Source of the DNA: Trichoplax adhaerens
Lineage: Eukaryota; Animalia; Placozoa
Direction: 5' to 3'
DNA length: 64,000 nt
Assembly (NCBI RefSeq): GCF_000150275.1
Contig: NW_002060949.1
Location: 1,919,836-1,983,835, forward strand
This document shows, in pieces, positions 41,701-59,819 of this stretch. The notes under the pieces were generated by a model that made no database searches, had not been told where the DNA came from, and worked only from the letters and a program-made list of their open reading frames with translations. Every line of letters starts with the position of its first letter. Positions within the stretch are counted from its first letter, which is position 1. The position numbers and the translations under genes were made by a program.

Positions 41701-44700
41701 GCTATATACAAGGTACAGAAGGTTACAGTTTTATACAGTGTACTACCTTTAAATAAGATACAAATACGCAAGCAACTTTCGATGATAGCGTCTTCGTATA
41801 TTATATCAATATGGTATTCATGTATCTTAACTGAGTAAATAAAGCACTTGCTACCAATAGTATACCCGCAATTGCATGAAAAATTCTAGCGGACTTTGGT
41901 ACCACCGCAGAGTCTCGAATCAGACAAATCTATTTACATACTGGTACAACGTCACAAAGTCCGTCTGTACTGTGGTTGTGTTCGTACGCTACTGGGCTCT
42001 TTTTTTCGAGTGTTGCAGTAATTCCTGATCGTGGTCATGGTACTAATGTTACACTCAACTGTACAGACAGTGACTGCTATATCAGATCTGTCGTAGAAAA
42101 CGACCGGGTTCTCTTTCCAGTACTGTCAGTGGAGTGAATGATTTACAGTATTTCGCACTATACTGTACAGTATATAATACAGCGTCTCTCTCTCTCTCTT
42201 TCCAAGGTCTCTAGAGTACACTACAGCACAGTAATGGCTAAAAAGTTTTTCACTTGCGGTAGCTTACAGTACAGTATGAAATCAGTATGCAGATCTATTG
42301 CACATAGTCTATGTATATCACCACTTCATTCTTGCCTTTTTAACATAAAATGTAGTTCAGTTTTCTCCAAATAAATATGGATGAAATATACTGTATGTTA
42401 ATAAATAGCTAAAGAATTCAAAATTTGATTAACATTGACATTTTGCCGTTTATGTATTTAATTTCTGAGTGAAGTTTTGAAAATTTTGTCGCTAGAATCG
42501 AGTAGTTGAGACTTTTCTCGACAATTTGATATGTAATTTTGCAATAATATTCTCTATATTCACTTATTTTTATTACTACATGGCTCGCAACGGCAAAATG
42601 CAATGAATCACACTCACTGTGGCTTACAGTACAGAATGCAAAGTACTGTACTGTACTTCCACACTGTACACTGTATAGTCCAGTACTGCATCTCATTCAA
42701 TTTTACGGGTAAATCGACTTCAGCACTGCATTTTATTCACTTTTCTCTTAATTTATTCATAGCCATTTGGGAGCTACGGCCTACGGTAGTCTGAATGTCT
42801 GAATAGGCTTACACAGATCAAAGGCATTCTGTAAAATTTCAACTCTATTCAAGACGTATCATATTTATATTCAATACTGTACAATACAAAGACCTAGAAA
42901 AATCGTTAATCGTACGCATACGTAAAATTGGATGCCACAAGTGAATCATTCATTGTAGGCGCACGGTACTATTGAGATGACACACTGAATTTTAGTCGTT
43001 ACAAGATTGGATTGCAAATTCGGATGCAATCCCCAATTACCGTAATCTGCTCTCTACTGCATAGTTGACAAAAATTTTACTAAACAAAAATAGTAGAATG
43101 GACAGTACTAAGTGAAAAATGAGCCAGTAATGTTGTAAAAAGTGCTGTACTACTCATGTTCGCCATCGTCTACTTTACTCGTATATCCGAAGGCTATCCC
43201 AACTAGATCCTGTACTTAAATGCGTCCTTTATAAGAATTTTCCCATTTTACATGCAACCATAGGATTATAATCACCCATTTACCCCTTTCGATTTAATAA
43301 TTTATCCCATAATGATGTAGTAGGCAGGAGTAGAATTAAGCAAGTTAAATGTATCAAGATATGATGAGGGCTCTAAATAGATTAATCTCAAGGTACAGGC
43401 GTAGTATAAGGTCAATGTACAAATCATCTCCTTATCAGGCGACGCATATTTTATATCGATATCGAAGAAATTGAAATGAAACTTTAAACTTCAATTTTGG
43501 TATAACAGGAAAAGCTATCAAAGCAGATAGATTTCGTTTCAGTCATGATCTACAATAACTAAAGCGCAATGGATATCATTTCGCTTGGCCTATTCAGTAT
43601 ATGGAGGGACTTAGCAGAACATATAAGCTATTGATAAATATTTTGGAATTATATTTGCAGAAGTAAAAACAGGGCCCGTCATAGGCAGTAAAAATCCAAG
43701 CTGAAAACTGGAAACTATTAATTTTACCAATCGCTTACAGTATCGTTGGCTGATATTAGAAGCAATAATTTATCATCGTTATAGTTAGTCCAAATACTCT
43801 TAAAAATTAGTTTAGGATAAACTTACATCGCTGCATCTGCTTGGTGTAATCATTCATGTTGTCCGGTCTGATACTGCGCAAAAACTTGATATAGTCATCA
43901 GAATGATATTTCGTCATTTCATCCTGCGTTGCTTTGTGGGGTCTCTGCAAAAAATAGTAATCGGTCAACAAATTTGACTCTGTTATGATAAAAAATACAT
44001 AAGTAACATAAAAGCAAAATAGTTCTTCATTAAGTAAAGGATTAAATAACTGAAGGCTATTAATACAACACAACTTAAAGGTACAGCAGTTCTGTATCTT
44101 TAAAACTATATCTATATAAGTACACAAGAACGTGATAAAGGGTATTGATCTTACGACAGGTACAGTAAGTACATCAGGAGGCGGAGGAAGGAATTTATCG
44201 AGAATTTAACTTGTTTCGATCATTAAGTAATTTGTTTTTACTTTATTGATGTAATTGATTAACCACTTGTTTTTTACTATAATTTTATATCTGAGGCAAT
44301 ATATGCGTATATTCAGCAAAATGTGGTAATTTTACTGATAGATAAAATGTGTACTTCTAGTTCTGTATTTGCGGTAAAAGGTTATCTAGAAAGTGTCCTG
44401 CAATTTCACGCAGGGATTGATAGCAGTAAAAAGGTAAAGGCAACATTGCTTAAAATAAAATCAAGTTACTAATACTTGATTACAATGTCAGTGTAATAAG
44501 GTATATATTTCGATTAAATCGGGCAGCGCATTCTATGTATGTACAAACTGTAACATTCTAAATTCAGCATGCAACAAGAAGTTGGCAACTACCGAGAGTT
44601 GGTCGATGCAAAAAAATATATTTGTAAAACTTACAAAAATTTCCATTTTTCTGTACAATCCGTAATTCAAGACCAAGTTATGTGTCATTCGAATACGATG

Positions 44701-47182: not shown

Positions 47183-47639
47183 GATGACTACAGTAATGTG
47201 TATATCAAAGCATTGCAATGAAAGTAGCCGTAAGCACTTCTTACGAATGACTCAGACTGACGTACTCTTCGTACTCATACTGTAGTCTACGTTGCCTAGA
47301 AGGGGACATGGCGTTACGTATAAAACTCGATATTGTACTGTGTAAAACTGCTATGCCGCACTCTACAGTGTACAGTACTTTCTGGGCCACCGTATTACTG
47401 TGCTATACAGTGTACTGTACACTCGGCGTACTGGGCCTGCGTACCCATGTGTGCTGCTATCGACTCAGTACGGCCCAGTATTGGACACTGAGCGTGTAGT
47501 ACTGCCCTGTACTGGCCAACCCGGTGAAGATACTGTATGACTATTTCCATCCATAATCGTGTTGCATCAAGCTGTTGGCTGTTAATATAAATTTCATTTT
47601 TTTTCTTAGCTTACTGTACTATTATTATGCACAACGATA

Positions 47640-50394
47640 ATGAAACAGAGAATAAAGTCTATTGGTAATGGCAATATTGCCGTGCATTATCGCTTTCAAT
47701 TTCAAAGAAGATTAAAATTAAGTATAGAGCAAGTTATACGCAAGGTAAGCAACAATGAATTCTAACCACGACCAACTACAGTATCGCCATGGCTGGAGAT
47801 GATTGTTGGCTGCACAGTGTACTGCCTTGTACAGTACAACATTATGCTTGAGTCAACCAATCTCCATCGATGTCATACACTGGTGTAAAATATACCCTTT
47901 GCAGTAGTGTCAAGAACAAGATCGTCAACCACTGTAACCCGCGAAAAATATTTAAGGCGGTAAAGAATACAACTAACTCAACTAGTTACTATCAAGGACA
48001 GGAGAGCATCTTGGTTACTGTACATTAGAATAAAATATCCATAATGTAAGGGATATTTAAATGCTGGATATTTCATCCATTATAGTATGATTTAATGTAG
48101 TTCCATCTATACAAATTAACAGTAGACAGTTTGTAATGATTAACTTTCCACCAAAATCACAAGATCGATGGTTCATTCATAACATCATAGTTACAGTGCG
48201 TTAGCAAGAGTATAAGTTAAAGTCTATAATTTACAAAAATGATCAAACTGTTGATGATATCCTTGCTAATTCCATCAGGAAATTGCAATATTATGATATA
48301 GACAGGTCATCGATATTGCTAGTAAGCATTGCTGACTGTATAAGAATACATCAGTTTTTCCATAGTTGGTAATTAAAAGAGTATCATGACAAGTGTCTTT
48401 CTGTAAGAGGTAGAACGCGCTGTGGGCAGTAGAATACGTATGACAATAGTAAAGTTATTTCGATTTTTGCAAGAGATCACAATTATTGACGTACGTTGAT
48501 ATGCTTGAGATGGAGAACTTCTAGTCTTTATTCACTGTAAATGAAGAATACACTATTGCATTTTTAAATAGTACCACCGATCGCAGAGTATCGGAAATCC
48601 TGTTATTAGTTAGATCCATGCAGAAGCTTGACTACAATAATGAATTATAATTAATTATTATTATCTGTACTTGCACAGTATGTACTCTACTGTATCTATA
48701 GTTCGGCCTCATTGAACTTACATTGACTCTGCACATAGCGTACATTTACAGTATATAAATATCTTTAAATAATTATATAATCAGTTCCAAAGAAATGAAG
48801 GACTGAATTTTGTTATAGTTAGGATAGTGTGTGCAAAAGGTAGAGTAGTAGCATTCAAATTGAGCACAAGCTGGTGGACATGTACTGGACGAAAACTTCA
48901 TTTCAATTACCACTTGTTATGCATCGCGTATTTTATCGCAATTAATTCAATAATAAACTTTCTTATCTTAAAATGCTTAACAATATCTCTTAGTTTATAC
49001 TAATCTGGCCACTATACCATTTATAGTATGACAAACCATTCGAAAACTCCGACGTTGTTGAATTATCAAATATGACCATTATTAAAAAAGGAGGTACTCA
49101 TCAGTATACGTTCGTACATAACGTATTTGATTGTAATGCTATAGAAGTAAATACAAGATTAATAAATACTGGTTGCTGGTTGAATTTCATTTCAACTTGA
49201 TTACTAATGGACCCAATTTGTTCATTATACCCAATGTCAACCCGTTTATAGACACATTGACTAAGCTACCGAAAAGGCTGGATTTCGGATCACTCTTTAC
49301 CGGAATTAAAACTAAGGGTAAATTTCTGGAAGATGTACTTTAATTTCTCCTTTATGGAATTATAAAAAGACGTAGCATTTCTGGTGACTAATACAATCTG
49401 TTAAGATATCAGAATTAAAAAAATTTTCGAAAGTTGGTATTTATGATTCAATACTATCTCTACAATATTGGAATTAATTTTCCATCTTTATATCATTTAT
49501 TATCATTATTCATAGTTATTTTAATACTAACATGAAGTTTTTATTCAATTAAAAGGTGTGTCTACACATGAATGTCTCCATGAATCAGCAACAAGCAGCG
49601 GATATCATACAAGTCTGCAAGCTGAAGAAGATCATTACACAAAAGATAAAGTAGATGTAGCACTAGATAATCAGACTGCGAAATCAACCCTTTTTATTGA
49701 TGTTTTTACTGCTGAGCAACTACTTAAACGTGTTGTAGATAATTTCTTATGTCAAATGCAACGTAAAGCGGTAAAACTAAATTATAATTTTAATAGCTAT
49801 GATTATAAACGGCAAAGTCGTGGTTACTTAAAAAAGACATTTTTACGGTTCACAGACGATGATATTAATCATAACGCATTAACTCAATATCAACATTTAT
49901 CATATACACAAAATACTATGCATAAAAGGCAACAACTTCACCTAAACCAAGCAAGAGCAATTGATTGGCCTCATAAAACTGATGATAACAAAAGTTGTGC
50001 TAGAACTATGCCTTTTACGAATTGCAATGTATCATGCGCTAGATGCAGACCATTTAAGTCAAAGGAGAAATTTTTACATTCACATAATGACAGTGCCATA
50101 AAATGTTCAGTAAATGATCTTTCACGTAGGAGTATAAAAGACGATGATACTGAAAGCTTAGAACTTGTTGAATTTCTTAATGGCGATGTACACAATATAA
50201 CTAGTAGACAGGTTGATAATTTAGAAGTTTCTTGTGCCAGAACTCGGCCTTGTCTAATAAGTGCAAATAATAGTTTGCAGCGTTTAGAAAAGCGTAAACT
50301 ATCTAAGGTAGATGTTATTGAAAATGATTCAGAAACTGTAATTTCATGTGCAAGATGTAGAGATTTTAATTTTTGTAAAATAACAAATCGTTAA
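47640..50394 (+). CDS. HJURP: Putative Scm3/HJURP-family CENP-A chaperone, about 336 aa
   Basis: Three phase-compatible exons: 47640-47744 (ends AAG|gtaagc), 49027-49093 (ttatag|TAT...GGAG|gtactc), 49556-50394 (aaaag|GT). Spliced N-terminus MKQRIKSIGNGNIAVHYRFQFQRRLKLSIEQVIRK/YDKPFENSDVVELSNMTIIKKG/G aligns without gaps to human HJURP RRRFQRRMQRLIEKYNQPFEDTPVVQMATLTYETPQG and to the fungal Scm3 pattern RLKxxFExIxxKY...D.vdL (sequences recalled, not searched). Confidence 0.75.
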
Positions 50395-52526
50395 ATAAAA
50401 ACATCGTTACCATTGCAAGCATTGTTTGCTTTCTAAACGGAAAGTTGGTTAATATTGTAATGGTGCTTCGTTTGATGAAGACTACTAAACTCGTTTACGG
50501 ACGTAATTAACTCCAAATTATATCTGGAGTTGCGTATGATACTGTAAAATTGCAAACAAAAGCTGTTTTTATTACCTGTGGTACGGAGGATCGTTCCGTG
50601 TATGCTTCTTAGACACTATAAGCTACCTAGAGATTGGAATTGGCTGTATAAGCTACGACTATATTCCTCTTTGTGGATTTGTAGCGGCGCTACAGTAGCG
50701 CAATCTCGAATTTGTAATGATACCCGTAATACATCAATCTCTTGACGAAAAGTGACTTAAACAGTAGCGTAGTTAATACATAGTACAGTATGCTTGCCAT
50801 GGTCCTTTCATAATATATGGGACCGTCTACTGTTAGTGTTTACTGCATAAATTTTATATTCAAATAACCAATAGCCAGGTTATTAATCCTCACGAATACA
50901 ATATATGCTGTAAAGGAATAGACACCGTATATCTATTAACTTGCAGTTTATATATGGTAGGACTATGACGATGTCGCACTCTGATTTTCATGACGCTGTC
51001 TCAGCCGGAGAGTATTCGCAATAATATACTGTACAACTAGCAAAGTAATGGTGCAGTAATAGGATTTAATAAGTCATTAGTTTACAGCTAGATAACTAGC
51101 GTATGGATATATTTTCGCACCTACAGTACAGTGTCGACACTTGTGACAGTAATGTAGTACAACTGTATCTTACAAGTGTTACGGCAGTCAATTTTTTCAC
51201 AATGTATATCCAATTTTACAATTTTATTACTTTATAAAACACTGTTAGGTGTCTAGATGACGGCAGTTCGCAATATTATTAAAATGTTTCAAAATTTACC
51301 ATCTTTCAAACAGTTTCAAATTGATATCAAATCAACAACGTATTCCAAATAAAATTCGAAGTTTAATTACAGTAATGTTAAGAGAAATTGGTGTATGATT
51401 AACAACGTACAATCAAATACATTTAAATAACACATGTTATGATAGTAGCATTATAGGAAATTAATCTTCAATCGATTAAAAATACTGAATAACATCCCTG
51501 TGAATCGGCTTATAGTAAGTGAGAACGTTAGTATGACAGTAACTAAGATAAAATTTGCTTTTTTCGCACCATAACAACACTTAATCAGCCTAAGATTATT
51601 GATTAAATATCGGTATCTATCCTAACGTATTAATTTTTTAAAACACATCTACTATACTATGCACTATAAGTACCGTAAGATATTGTTGCTGTTTGAGTTT
51701 ACAGACGTGATTAACGGCTAATATAGCATCATTGCACCATAAAATTGATTGGATATCAGGACTATACAACAATGAATATACTATACCATGCTAGATAATC
51801 TGTTTACTTAAGTGGATTATTAACAAATTAATAATAGTCTTATATAATGAACATACATGATCTTTGAGATGTACTTAGAAACACACGTAATAACTTTTTA
51901 TCGAGCTGATGCAGTCTTGCTTCATGCCATACATAAAAATTAAGGTTATTATCAAATGCCTGTGACAGGATATTAAGAAATGCATCTTGCATGATATTAG
52001 TAAAACTTAGCAACTTACAACAAATTCATTTTATAATGACATGATATTCGTGTTCATAATAATTATATAATTCCTCCTTAACGAGAATAAATGTGGTTAA
52101 GAATTTTGTTATTATTTTAAAGCGTTTAAAATCAATGATTTTAGTAAAATTATTATTATTTTAATTTTGAAATGAAATTTAGAACAGGCTTGAAGCTTAA
52201 TCAGTATATTTGAAATTAATTTGCTTAAAAATTGAACAAAAATTACCATTTACATAACTGATAATAGTTTTACTGGATAATAATAATAAGAAGAAGGCAG
52301 CATGACTATTTACTTAATCCAATTTATAGATAGCTTCAGCTTAATAAAAATAGCACATCAAACTTAAGGGAGATGTAAAATTTGAGGTTCATTTCTAATA
52401 GTTGCAATTACTGCACTTAAATGATTGCAATCTGAATAATAATGCAGTTCCATAGTACCTTATTTTTAGTCAGGTGATCAGGTGTTGCTGTTACCAATAC
52501 CAAAACTAGTCGGTGACATTTTTACG

Positions 52527-56895
<4,369 letters not shown>

Positions 56896-57079: not shown

Positions 57080-57900
57080 TCCACCTAGTACAGTACGTAC
57101 ATGCTGTACACTGTGCAGTACAGTGTACAGTACTGTAGGGCACAGACGTCTACAGTACTGTACTGTACAATACTGAAAAACAGGCGTGACACAGGCAACT
57201 TGGCAGCCTGTCTCTTGACATGAAAATATTGTAGTACTGTGTACTGTACTTGTACGTTACCTTATTAGTGAAGATGGTTTGGTTGAAACTTCCTGTAAAA
57301 GTCCTGTACTGTCGTGTTTTGCATGGTACAGTAGTGAGAAGTCCAAGCTGCGAATCCGACTGAGTACTGCAGCTTTGATCGGTATTTTACTTGGTTGTAG
57401 AGTGTAGACCATGGTAGTCCTACAGTACTGTGATAATACTACTGTAGTTAGCGCCAAGATTACTTGGAAGTAAAGTACAGTATAGCACAGTACTGCTGTA
57501 AATGATACCTAGTAAATGATATCAATGACGTACAACACAGTATACTGTACTGACCACTACGTCAGCAACAGTACCATCACTGGGCTTCTCTCTTTACCAT
57601 TACTATACTGTACAGTGTACAGTATACAGTACACAGTCTACAGTATGCTTCTACTACAGTATAGTACTGTACACTGTACACTGTACAGTACAGTACTGTA
57701 GTAGAGACCCTAGAGATACTGACACTAACTCAATTCTAAGTCAGGTCTACAGTACTGTACTGTACAGTACGTATATCGATCCCTCGCTCGTGATGCTTCG
57801 CTTACAGTACTGTACACTGTGTACAGTACAGTACAGTATACTGTACGTACAGTGTACAGTACAGTCAGTACAGTACTGCTGCTTCTGAACTAGTTCTGTA
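57080..57900. repeat. Very dense TACAG/TACTG cluster immediately upstream of the Src-family gene
   Basis: For example agtactgtacactgtacactgtacagtacagtactgtagtag (57663-57704) and ttacagtactgtacactgtgtacagtacagtacagtatactgtacgtacagtgtacagtacagtcagtacagtactg (57802-57878). Confidence 0.85.
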
Positions 57901-57944
57901 ATCCATGTCGATCTCTCGCTAGTGATGCTTCGCTTACATTAGAG

Positions 57945-58082
57945 TACGGCGTCTGGAATTTCGTTAGACATACTTTAACTGGAAAAAATGGAACTAAAAC
58001 GAACGTACGAATACACTAGTTCTACCGATATCGAGCAATCAATTTCATTTCAATTTTGACTAAAATATCGCATACCAAAATA
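57945..58082 (+). repeat. Dispersed repeat copy 2 (also at 16849-16962)
   Basis: Aligns with 16849-16962 apart from an extra segment of about 24 nt (gatatcgagcaatcaatttcattt). Confidence 0.8.
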
Positions 58083-59819
58083 ACATTGCTCTATACACTA
58101 CAGTGTACACTATTTGTCTCCTTACTTTACATTATGTACAGTAATTAACTGTACAAAAATCATCCAAATTAGCCCGTCCACCCTGTACAGTGTACACTCT
58201 ACACTACACGCTTGTACTGTCACTCCCAGTCGAACTACATGATTACACTATTCTCAATTCATTGACAACTGGGAAGACAGCATAGAAAATCGGAAAATCT
58301 TTTTCAGTTGCGTAAAAAGGATCGACGCTTGACACTTCTAATTGAAATCAGAGACAGTACAGAGGGACGATTCTGATGCTGTATTACCTGAAATTCAAGC
58401 CAACAACAGTGATCAATTGACCAAAGATAACGCTTTAGGATTGATGACGATAGTTTAATTGGCATGCTGTATGCACAGACACAGTTCCATTATTTTAGAT
58501 GCTATATTGTCAGGTATCAATGGCTAAAGAGACGACATACTGGTCGATCGTCTTATGCTTTAGCCGAGAATGTCCACAAATTTTTTGACGGTTTAGCATT
58601 GCATATACCGCAATGACGCAAAAGAAAACTGTAATGTGCTATGAAAGGAATGATAATTAAAAGATCTCGTTTTAATACCCATAAATATGAAAGTGTACAG
58701 TACTTTTCTCGATCACTTAGCTTTTTTTATCTAGTTAACGCGATTGATTGATAAGCATATCTGAATTGCCAAAGGTTTGGCAAAAATGATACATAACATG
58801 AAACTGAAGTATAGTAGTGTAGCAATATACCCATATTTGATGATACAGATAGCTATATTTGATAGAGTTAGGTTACTTTCAATAGATACTGAAATAGGTT
58901 ATCGTCAAGCTAATATGAGATGATTGCTAACGACTACATTACAAATTGTTGATGACTAATAGTGGCCAGTGGACTAATTATGGTACAAGATTGATGTAGC
59001 TAGAAACATTGTAGTTGTTCAGATGGCCTTCGGAGAAAGGGGCTAGACGCTAATAGAAGAGTAGTAACATCTTAAGTAGAATGATTTAGATTGTAGAAAA
59101 TAATGATGTACCATTAAAGAAAAGAAATTTGTTAGATGACTCATGTCTGATTGTAGATTAATTAAGTTGTCATAAGGAGAAGGGACTTCACTTCGCTTTG
59201 AGCTCGGAATACTTTCGATTTTAGACCAGATTCTTGTAGTAATTCATTATTGCTCTACTATTCCTAATAAAACCTCGTAATAAAAGCCTTTTAGAAAATA
59301 CCATCTGACTAAGATAGTTATTGTGAGACGCATTTATTACAAGTAGTAATACGCGTAAGTAATTAAAATACCTCCTGCGTGACTTAATATTGAAGACATT
59401 TATGTGAATTTCTTTAGACATCTTTCAAAGAGTTTAATTCAATCGGCTTACAGAATGCACGCGCTCCCAAACAATCACACGATAGAAGAAAAGATAAGAT
59501 CTTATTTATATATGTATAATTATTGAATATGTAAGTAACATATATATACATCAATCAGAACCTAATACTTACATATTCAATAATTGACTCCAAGTAAAAC
59601 ATCCTCATTTTAATAATGTCCATTGAATACCCATTTATATTTTATTTCGTCATTACGAAGATCTTAACTTATTAGCAGATAATAAATCTGGTAACAAAAC
59701 TAATCGCTAATAAATACTCTATAACGATCAGCTAAAAAGGCAGAATCTATTTTTTTGTGATTACGTTTAAGCTTGGCACCCAATTATATTGACGTAACGT
59801 CGCAATAGTAAATCCCAGT

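What the first reader, a model, noticed from the sequence alone, without database searches (positions are those of the whole stretch)
47640..50394. Cryptic Scm3/HJURP-type CENP-A chaperone assembled from two small exons and an orphan ORF
Seen: the 278-aa orphan ORF starts at a phase-1 acceptor (49556), not an ATG. A 67-nt exon (49027-49093) and a 105-nt exon (47640-47744) with good splice sites join it in frame, giving RRLKLSIEQVIRK|YDKPFENSDVVELSNMTIIKKG|G. Established: the CENP-A-binding domain of fungal Scm3 and vertebrate HJURP is a basic helix ending in KY followed by a short beta region (human ...RRMQRLIEKYNQPFEDTPVVQMATLTYETPQG); it is short, fast-evolving and often missed outside fungi and tetrapods. 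The segment after KY aligns without gaps (Y, PFE, VV, T and G identical). As I recall, human HJURP also has an intron between K and Y followed by a 67-nt exon; this needs checking. Inference: this is a centromeric histone loader in an early-branching animal, with features of both the fungal (RLK..E) and vertebrate (KY..PFE..VV) versions.
Basis: partly seen in the sequence, partly recalled or inferred. Interest (0 to 1): 0.92.

Follow-up and report, generated by a model that had tools for sequence, protein, structure and literature searches.

The report
Placozoan HJURP/Scm3 gene, truncated in annotation
This is very probably the Trichoplax version of HJURP/Scm3, the protein that loads the centromere histone. 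Its histone-binding start is missing from the reference annotation but present in a sister strain's public model, so this is an expected family member and an annotation fix.

Summary
The genome is Trichoplax adhaerens.

Evidence that this is an Scm3/HJURP protein:
- The H2 protein hits Pfam Scm3 at E 2.6e-5, 24.3 bits, exactly the gathering cut-off.
- Its best solved-structure match is human HJURP (E 0.17, weak).
- Exon 1 is 27/35 identical in a divergent, apparently placozoan sequence whose C-terminal part is only about 47% identical. The similarity stops at the splice donor.
- A complex model puts residues 13-60 on Trichoplax CENP-A/H4: score 0.85, best control 0.00. A like complex is solved, so this shows likeness, not binding.

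Not tested:
- The shared human intron position.
- CENP-A versus H3 selectivity.

The vertebrate HJURP mid and C-terminal domains are absent. The tail is probably disordered and carries four conserved SCAR motifs.

Verdict: a new member of a known family. Interest is modest.

The parts
47640..47744 (+). Coding exon 1 (105 nt, residues 1-35). It starts at the ATG and encodes the basic helix ...YRFQFQRRLKLSIEQVIRK. The donor is AAG|gtaagc.
   Evidence: It is identical to residues 1-35 of public protein P0003. It is 27/35 identical to P0005 residues 12-46, with similarity ending at the donor.
49027..49093 (+). Coding exon 2 (67 nt, phase 0 to 1, residues 36-57 plus one base). It encodes YDKPFENSDVVELSNMTIIKKG, the core of the Scm3 domain.
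   Evidence: On its own it hits Pfam Scm3 at E 0.11, profile positions 23-43. Its donor is used by both public models.
49252..49317 (+). Coding exon 3 (66 nt, phase 1-1, residues 58-79, DTLTKLPKRLDFGSLFTGIKTK). Including or skipping it keeps the frame.
   Evidence: It is present in both P0001 and P0003. The splice sites are tttatag| and |gtaaat. The Pfam Scm3 match runs into it, to residue 63.
49556..50394 (+). AATAAA at 50394-50399 overlaps the stop.
   Evidence: An AlphaFold2 model has mean pLDDT 29.6, so it is probably mostly disordered.
49681..49749 (+). The most conserved stretch of the tail, KSTLFIDVFTAEQLLKRVVDNFL. It overlaps the only predicted helix, which begins at FTAEQ.
   Evidence: Alignments. 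The helix covers ORF residues 49-66 in the model.
49993..50376 (+). Four repeats of the motif [VI]SCAR[TC]R(P), conserved in the apparently placozoan homologues. Function unknown.
   Evidence: Alignments. Also noted by the first stage as s1-801494.

Best explanation
Window 47640-50394 (+) holds a single-copy, four-exon gene of Trichoplax adhaerens that encodes a 358-aa Scm3/HJURP-family protein.

Shown:
- The exons, phases and splice sites.
- Identity of the exons to a public protein of Trichoplax sp. H2.
- A Pfam Scm3 match over residues 22-63.
- Strong conservation of exon 1 in a divergent, apparently placozoan sequence.

Inferred: residues about 13-60 form a helix from exon 1 followed by a short strand region from exons 2 and 3. 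This clamps one CENP-A/H4 dimer along CENP-A alpha1/L1/alpha2 and H4 alpha3. As in human HJURP and yeast Scm3, that would keep the dimer from forming tetramers and binding DNA until it is delivered to the centromere.

Also inferred: the long, probably disordered tail, with one conserved helix and four SCAR motifs, targets or regulates the protein at the centromere.

The reference annotation (TRIADDRAFT_57993) begins inside exon 2 and therefore lacks the histone-binding helix.
For: - Public models: P0001 (308 aa, T. adhaerens) and P0003 (358 aa, Trichoplax sp. H2, in the same 90%-identity cluster).
- P0003 maps to exactly four exon matches at this locus and nowhere else in the 105.6-Mb genome.
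- Pfam Scm3 PF10384: E 2.6e-5, 24.3 bits against a cut-off of 24.3, residues 22-63 to profile 9-51/53. It is the only family hit. Exon 2 alone scores 12.6 bits.
- The best PDB match is HJURP chain 3r45_C, residues 22-53 against 27-58.
- Atlas feature search: chordate HJURP clusters among the top three at 0.83. This is a lead only.
- P0005 carries an exon-1 homologue that is 27/35 identical and diverges right after the donor. The tail homologues are only 44-48% identical.
- The genome encodes a divergent H3 variant, named CENP-A in the H2 annotation.
- Complex model with CENP-A 40-142, H4 20-103 and P0003 1-85: score 0.85, best of 3 controls 0.00. The runs agree in at least 70% of contacts and the partner pLDDT is 61-67. 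The mark was reached by 51 of 78 solved complexes and 2 of 108 mismatched pairs. On eukaryotes it was reached by 39 of 65 solved pairs and 2 of 126 unrelated pairs.
- The H2 gene models come from an evidence-based MAKER run that used RNA-seq assemblies (PMC6057997).
Against: - The junctions therefore rest on two gene predictions and on conservation.
- The Pfam score is exactly at threshold. The PDB E-value (0.17) is not significant on its own, and exon 1 alone hits nothing.
- An exhaustive profile search of 1.84 billion proteins found no relative beyond three sequences that all look placozoan.
- HJURP_mid and HJURP_C are absent.
- The complex pass may reflect the model's memory of the solved HJURP-CENP-A-H4 structure. 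It does not address selectivity against H3, to which this CENP-A is very similar in alpha2-alpha3.
Confidence: 0.82

Rival explanations
1. The gene is real and carries an Scm3 domain, but the main transcript is the reader's three-exon form, which skips the 66-nt exon 49252-49317. Alternatively, that exon is an alternative cassette.
For: The 66-nt exon is phase 1-1, so skipping it keeps the frame. No RNA data were available to decide.
Against: Both independent public models include the exon. Its splice sites are as good as the others. The Pfam Scm3 match (to residue 63) and the modelled interface (residues 59-60) both run into it.
Confidence: 0.15
2. The resemblance to Scm3/HJURP is chance or convergence. 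The protein is a placozoan-specific, mostly disordered protein with another role, or exons 1-2 are not joined to the ORF at all.
For: The Pfam score is only at threshold and the pairwise match to HJURP is E 0.17. There are no non-placozoan relatives in exhaustive search. 24 in-frame AG..GT candidates exist by chance. There is no RNA evidence.
Against: E 2.6e-5 is against all 24,736 Pfam families, and Scm3 is the only hit. The match falls on the most conserved part of the protein (77% against about 47% identity). The complex score is 0.85 against controls of 0.00. The H2 model was built without reference to this idea.
Confidence: 0.08
3. The domain is a true Scm3 fold, but the protein chaperones H3/H4 in general rather than CENP-A selectively.
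For: Trichoplax CENP-A is nearly identical to H3 across alpha2-alpha3 and differs mainly in the tail, L1 and the start of alpha2.
Against: The modelled contacts of V45/V46 are with CENP-A residues 88-90 (YWQ), in the L1/alpha2 region that differs from H3. From established knowledge of the family, no Scm3-domain protein is known to act as a general H3 chaperone.
Confidence: 0.07

Closest known systems
Human HJURP (Holliday junction recognition protein), N-terminal Scm3/CENP-A-binding domain, PDB 3R45
   Same: - An N-terminal basic helix ends in KY and is followed by PFE..VV and a T-containing strand. The alignment is gap-free over residues 22-53 against 27-58.
- The modelled binding mode lies along CENP-A alpha2 and H4 alpha3.
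- A long, poorly structured tail follows.
   Different: - It is 358 aa, against 748 aa for human HJURP (length from PMC10070699).
- There are no HJURP_mid or HJURP_C (HCTD) domains.
- The TLTY box reads MTII.
- The tail instead carries four SCAR motifs and one conserved helix.
- Pairwise similarity is weak (E 0.17).
Fungal Scm3 (Pfam PF10384 founding members)
   Same: The Pfam Scm3 model is matched over 43 of its 53 positions at the gathering score. The protein is small and has an N-terminal histone-binding domain.
   Different: No fungal Scm3 chain appeared in the PDB search even at E up to 10. There is no Myb-like or other fungal accessory domain.
TrispH2_006472 (RDD41302.1), hypothetical protein of Trichoplax sp. 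H2
   Same: It is the same gene with the same four exons. In the 283-residue alignment to the last exon, identity is 99%.
   Different: It is annotated only as 'hypothetical'. The T. adhaerens model XP_002113994.1 lacks residues 1-50.

Membership tests
Scm3/HJURP family (Pfam PF10384) | Scm3 domain profile match at or above Pfam's gathering score | tested here: met
   P0003 scores 24.3 bits against a cut-off of 24.3, E 2.6e-5, residues 22-63. This is borderline, exactly at threshold. Exon 2 alone scores 12.6 bits.
Scm3/HJURP family (Pfam PF10384) | The domain sits at the N-terminus and is a helix followed by a short strand region | tested here: inconclusive
   The position is N-terminal. Interface residues 13-35 recur every 3-4 positions, as for a helix. 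No secondary-structure readout was available, and the partner pLDDT is only 61-67.
Scm3/HJURP family (Pfam PF10384) | Binds a CENP-A/H4 dimer | tested here: inconclusive
   In silico only. Score 0.85 against best control 0.00, runs agreeing in at least 70% of contacts, partner pLDDT 61-67. The pass may come from memory of 3R45. No experiment was done.
Scm3/HJURP family (Pfam PF10384) | Selective for CENP-A over H3 | not tested
Scm3/HJURP family (Pfam PF10384) | A CENP-A gene is present in the same genome | tested here: met
   A multi-exon divergent H3 variant lies at G000:C1413:3589003-3590126. It equals P0007, named 'histone H3-like centromeric protein A'.
Vertebrate-type HJURP architecture | HJURP_mid (PF12346) and HJURP_C/HCTD repeats (PF12347) | tested here: not met
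   Neither family was hit, even at E up to 10.
Vertebrate-type HJURP architecture | TLTY box after the PFE..VV segment | tested here: not met
   The aligned residues are MTII. Only the T is kept.
   No animal genome other than this one is reachable, and human DNA was not to be handled. The one review read gives only 'nine exons' (PMC10070699).

The most novel reading that the evidence does not exclude
The four conserved SCAR[TC]R(P) motifs and the conserved helix in the disordered tail may be a placozoan-specific centromere-targeting or regulatory module. It would stand in for the vertebrate HCTD repeats, for example by binding the Mis18 complex or CENP-C, or by sharing a metal through the four invariant cysteines. 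That would be a third solution for recruiting an Scm3-domain chaperone.
Probability: 0.15. Interest if true: 0.5.

Novelty: new member of a known kind. Interest (0 to 1): 0.3.

Why it matters
- It corrects a truncated reference gene model. XP_002113994.1 lacks the first 50 residues, including the histone-binding helix.
- It gives a name to a 'hypothetical' protein.
- It places an Scm3-domain CENP-A chaperone in Placozoa. That fits the accepted common ancestry of fungal Scm3 and vertebrate HJURP, and helps map where the family was kept and where it was lost, as in flies and nematodes.
- It is an expected result, not a surprise. The unexplained tail motifs are the only part that could lead somewhere new.

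Tried and rejected
Exon 2 and the 66-nt exon could therefore not be compared across species.
- The exons were searched apart, and the public protein P0003 was used for whole-protein tests.
- Six-frame search of the genome with Pfam Scm3 found nothing, not even this locus. This is uninformative, because the domain is split by an intron.
- PDB searches with single exons found nothing.
- The exhaustive profile search found no non-placozoan relative.
- The AlphaFold2 model of the tail had pLDDT 29.6, so no fold search was made.
- The weak PDB match of the tail to 9g7l_A (E 0.7) was taken as chance.
- Six-frame search for SANTA found nothing. The search for Yippee-Mis18 gave two hits that were not resolved into Mis18 or Yippee.
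- Literature: no held paper links Trichoplax with HJURP or Scm3 in a relevant way. The kinetochore survey PMC5579357 does not cover HJURP. Sanchez-Pulido et al. 2009 (PMC4397584) is not held, so whether it already listed a Trichoplax sequence is unknown.
- A mixed alignment that included P0005's intron read-through (A3) was not used as a profile.

Full report
**What is in the sequence**

The window comes from a 105.6-Mb genome in 1414 contigs with about 31% G+C. The 278-aa ORF at 49558-50394 is 100% identical to 'uncharacterized protein TRIADDRAFT_57993 [Trichoplax adhaerens]' (XP_002113994.1, 308 aa, P0001). The organism is therefore the placozoan Trichoplax adhaerens, and the ORF is an annotated gene, not an orphan.

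| Exon | Coordinates | Length | Boundaries |
|---|---|---|---|
| 1 | 47640-47744 | 105 nt | ATG ... AAG\|gtaagc |
| 2 | 49027-49093 | 67 nt | tttatag\|TAT ... GAG\|gtactc |
| last | 49556-50394 | 839 nt | phase-1 acceptor ttaaaag\|GT |

- An in-frame TAG at 47607-47609 makes 47640 the first ATG of its open frame.
- The stop codon overlaps an AATAAA at 50394-50399.

**The public gene models**

AAGG|gtaaat, phase 1-1), and into the last exon.

The same 90% cluster holds P0003, 'hypothetical protein TrispH2_006472 [Trichoplax sp. H2]' (RDD41302.1, 358 aa). Its sequence is exon 1, exon 2, the 66-nt exon and the last exon. The four exons add up to 1077 nt, which is 358 codons plus the stop.

Searching the whole genome with P0003 gives four exon matches at this locus and nothing elsewhere. 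They start at window 47640, 49024, 49251 and 49543. The gene is therefore single-copy.

The H2 models were produced with the evidence-based MAKER pipeline, using RNA-seq assemblies (PMC6057997). Whether this particular model had transcript support is not known.

They are missing only from the T. adhaerens reference model.

**Chance**

Splice compatibility alone says little. 24 open AG..GT segments of 40-150 nt in the required phases lie between exon 1 and the last exon. The other evidence has to carry the case.

**Is it Scm3/HJURP?**

For whole-protein tests I used the public protein P0003.

- Exon 2 alone (22 aa) hits only Pfam Scm3: E 0.11, 12.6 bits, profile positions 23-43.
- Exon 1 and the ORF alone hit nothing.
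- P0003 hits only Scm3 (PF10384): E 2.6e-5, 24.3 bits, residues 22-63 to profile positions 9-51 of 53.
- That score equals the family's gathering cut-off of 24.3, so membership is met but borderline.
- The match spans the exon 1/exon 2 junction and runs six residues into the 66-nt exon.
- Against all solved structures, the best match of P0003 is human HJURP (3r45_C). Residues 22-53 align without gaps to 27-58, sharing KY, PFE, VV and T (E 0.17).
- The ESM Atlas feature search puts chordate HJURP clusters among its top three at 0.83. This is a lead only.
- HJURP_mid and HJURP_C are not detected, even at E up to 10.

**Conservation**

An exhaustive profile search of 1.84 billion representative proteins found only three proteins:
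- P0001 itself.
- P0004, a 207-aa tail fragment.
- P0005, 90 aa, E 3.8e-8.

The earlier word-based search had also found P0002, a 283-aa tail homologue.

Residues 12-46 of P0005 read MKSRVDSTGNGNVAMHYGFQFQRRLKLSIDQVIRK. That is 27/35 identical to exon 1. The sequences diverge immediately after the K, which is where the T. adhaerens donor lies. P0005 evidently reads on into an intron.

The tail homologues are only 44-48% identical to the T. adhaerens ORF. The predicted histone-binding helix is therefore the best-conserved part of the protein, as expected for the functional core.

These relatives come from ENA and Logan assemblies without names. I take them for other placozoans, but this is inference. 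Their contigs could not be fetched, so exon 2 and the 66-nt exon could not be compared.

**The partner and the complex**

A six-frame search with the histone profile finds two canonical H3 genes and one multi-exon divergent H3 variant at G000:C1413:3589003-3590126. That variant corresponds to P0007, 'histone H3-like centromeric protein A [Trichoplax sp. H2]', 142 aa. It has a divergent tail, one extra residue in loop 1, a changed start of alpha2 (YDITSQHFYWQVEALLAIQ) and a C-terminal extension. Its alpha2-alpha3 is close to H3. H4 was taken from L012:1387-1695.

The complex model used CENP-A 40-142, H4 20-103 and P0003 1-85:
- It scored 0.85, with the best of 3 controls at 0.00.
- The runs agree in at least 70% of their contacts, and the partner's pLDDT is 61-67.
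- The mark was reached by 51 of 78 solved complexes and 2 of 108 mismatched pairs.
- On eukaryotes it was reached by 39 of 65 solved pairs with no like older complex, and by 2 of 126 unrelated pairs.
- It touches CENP-A alpha1, L1, alpha2 and alpha3, and H4 residues 81-95.
- The most confident contacts are residues 29-37 with CENP-A 91-102 and H4 84-92, and V45/V46 with CENP-A 88-90.

From established knowledge, this is the arrangement of the solved HJURP-CENP-A-H4 complex. Because that complex is solved, the pass may be from memory. It shows likeness, not that this copy binds, and it says nothing about selectivity against H3.

**The tail**

The AlphaFold2 model of the last exon has mean pLDDT 29.6, with one helix (ORF residues 49-66) and a terminal hairpin. 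It is probably largely disordered.

Two features are conserved among the homologues:
- The segment KSTLFIDVFTAEQLLKRVVDNFL.
- Four motifs of the form [VI]SCAR[TC]R(P).

Their role is unknown. By analogy with HJURP and Scm3, I infer centromere targeting or regulation.

**Surroundings**

- Upstream on the minus strand is an exon of a class I histone deacetylase-like gene (43807-44127).
- Downstream on the minus strand is a Src-type tyrosine kinase (52527-53408 and 56428-56895).
- These names are my reading of the translations and were not checked with a profile search.

**What could not be done**

- The recalled human intron position was not checked. No human DNA was handled, and no other animal genome is reachable here.
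- Sanchez-Pulido et al. 2009 is not held. No held paper links Trichoplax with HJURP or Scm3.

**Verdict**

The interpretation as an Scm3/HJURP-type CENP-A chaperone is supported by profile, conservation and modelling. It is not yet supported by transcript or biochemical data.

This is an expected member of a known family and a correction of a truncated reference model. Interest is modest.

Noticed in passing
window 49993-50376: Four [VI]SCAR[TC]R(P) motifs sit in the tail, each with an invariant Cys. They are conserved in homologues that are only 44-48% identical overall. No Pfam or PDB match explains them.
   Followed up: partly
window 47300-47530 and 47810-47850: Dense TACAGTA/TACTGTA-like words lie just upstream of exon 1, and again inside intron 1. 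The first stage noted similar thickets at 57080-58220. Here they sit where the promoter should be.
   Followed up: no
window 47599-47609: A good acceptor-like site (tttttttcttag) lies 30 nt upstream of the ATG. It could mark a 5'-UTR intron. A short out-of-frame upstream ORF starts at 47627.
   Followed up: no
window 43807-44127 (-) ; 52527-53408 (-) and 56428-56895 (-): The neighbouring genes look like a class I histone deacetylase exon upstream and a Src-family tyrosine kinase (SH3-bearing N-terminus and kinase domain) downstream.
   Followed up: no
L007 (G000:C1413:3589003-3590126): The Trichoplax CENP-A gene has at least three histone-fold exons. Its alpha2-alpha3 is almost identical to H3, and divergence is confined to the tail, loop 1, the start of alpha2 and a C-terminal extension.
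   Followed up: partly
G000:C1413:7420590-7420907 (-) and G000:C1412:2340953-2341096 (+): Two Yippee/Mis18-family loci are present in the genome. Whether either is Mis18 was not resolved. No SANTA domain was found by six-frame search.
   Followed up: no
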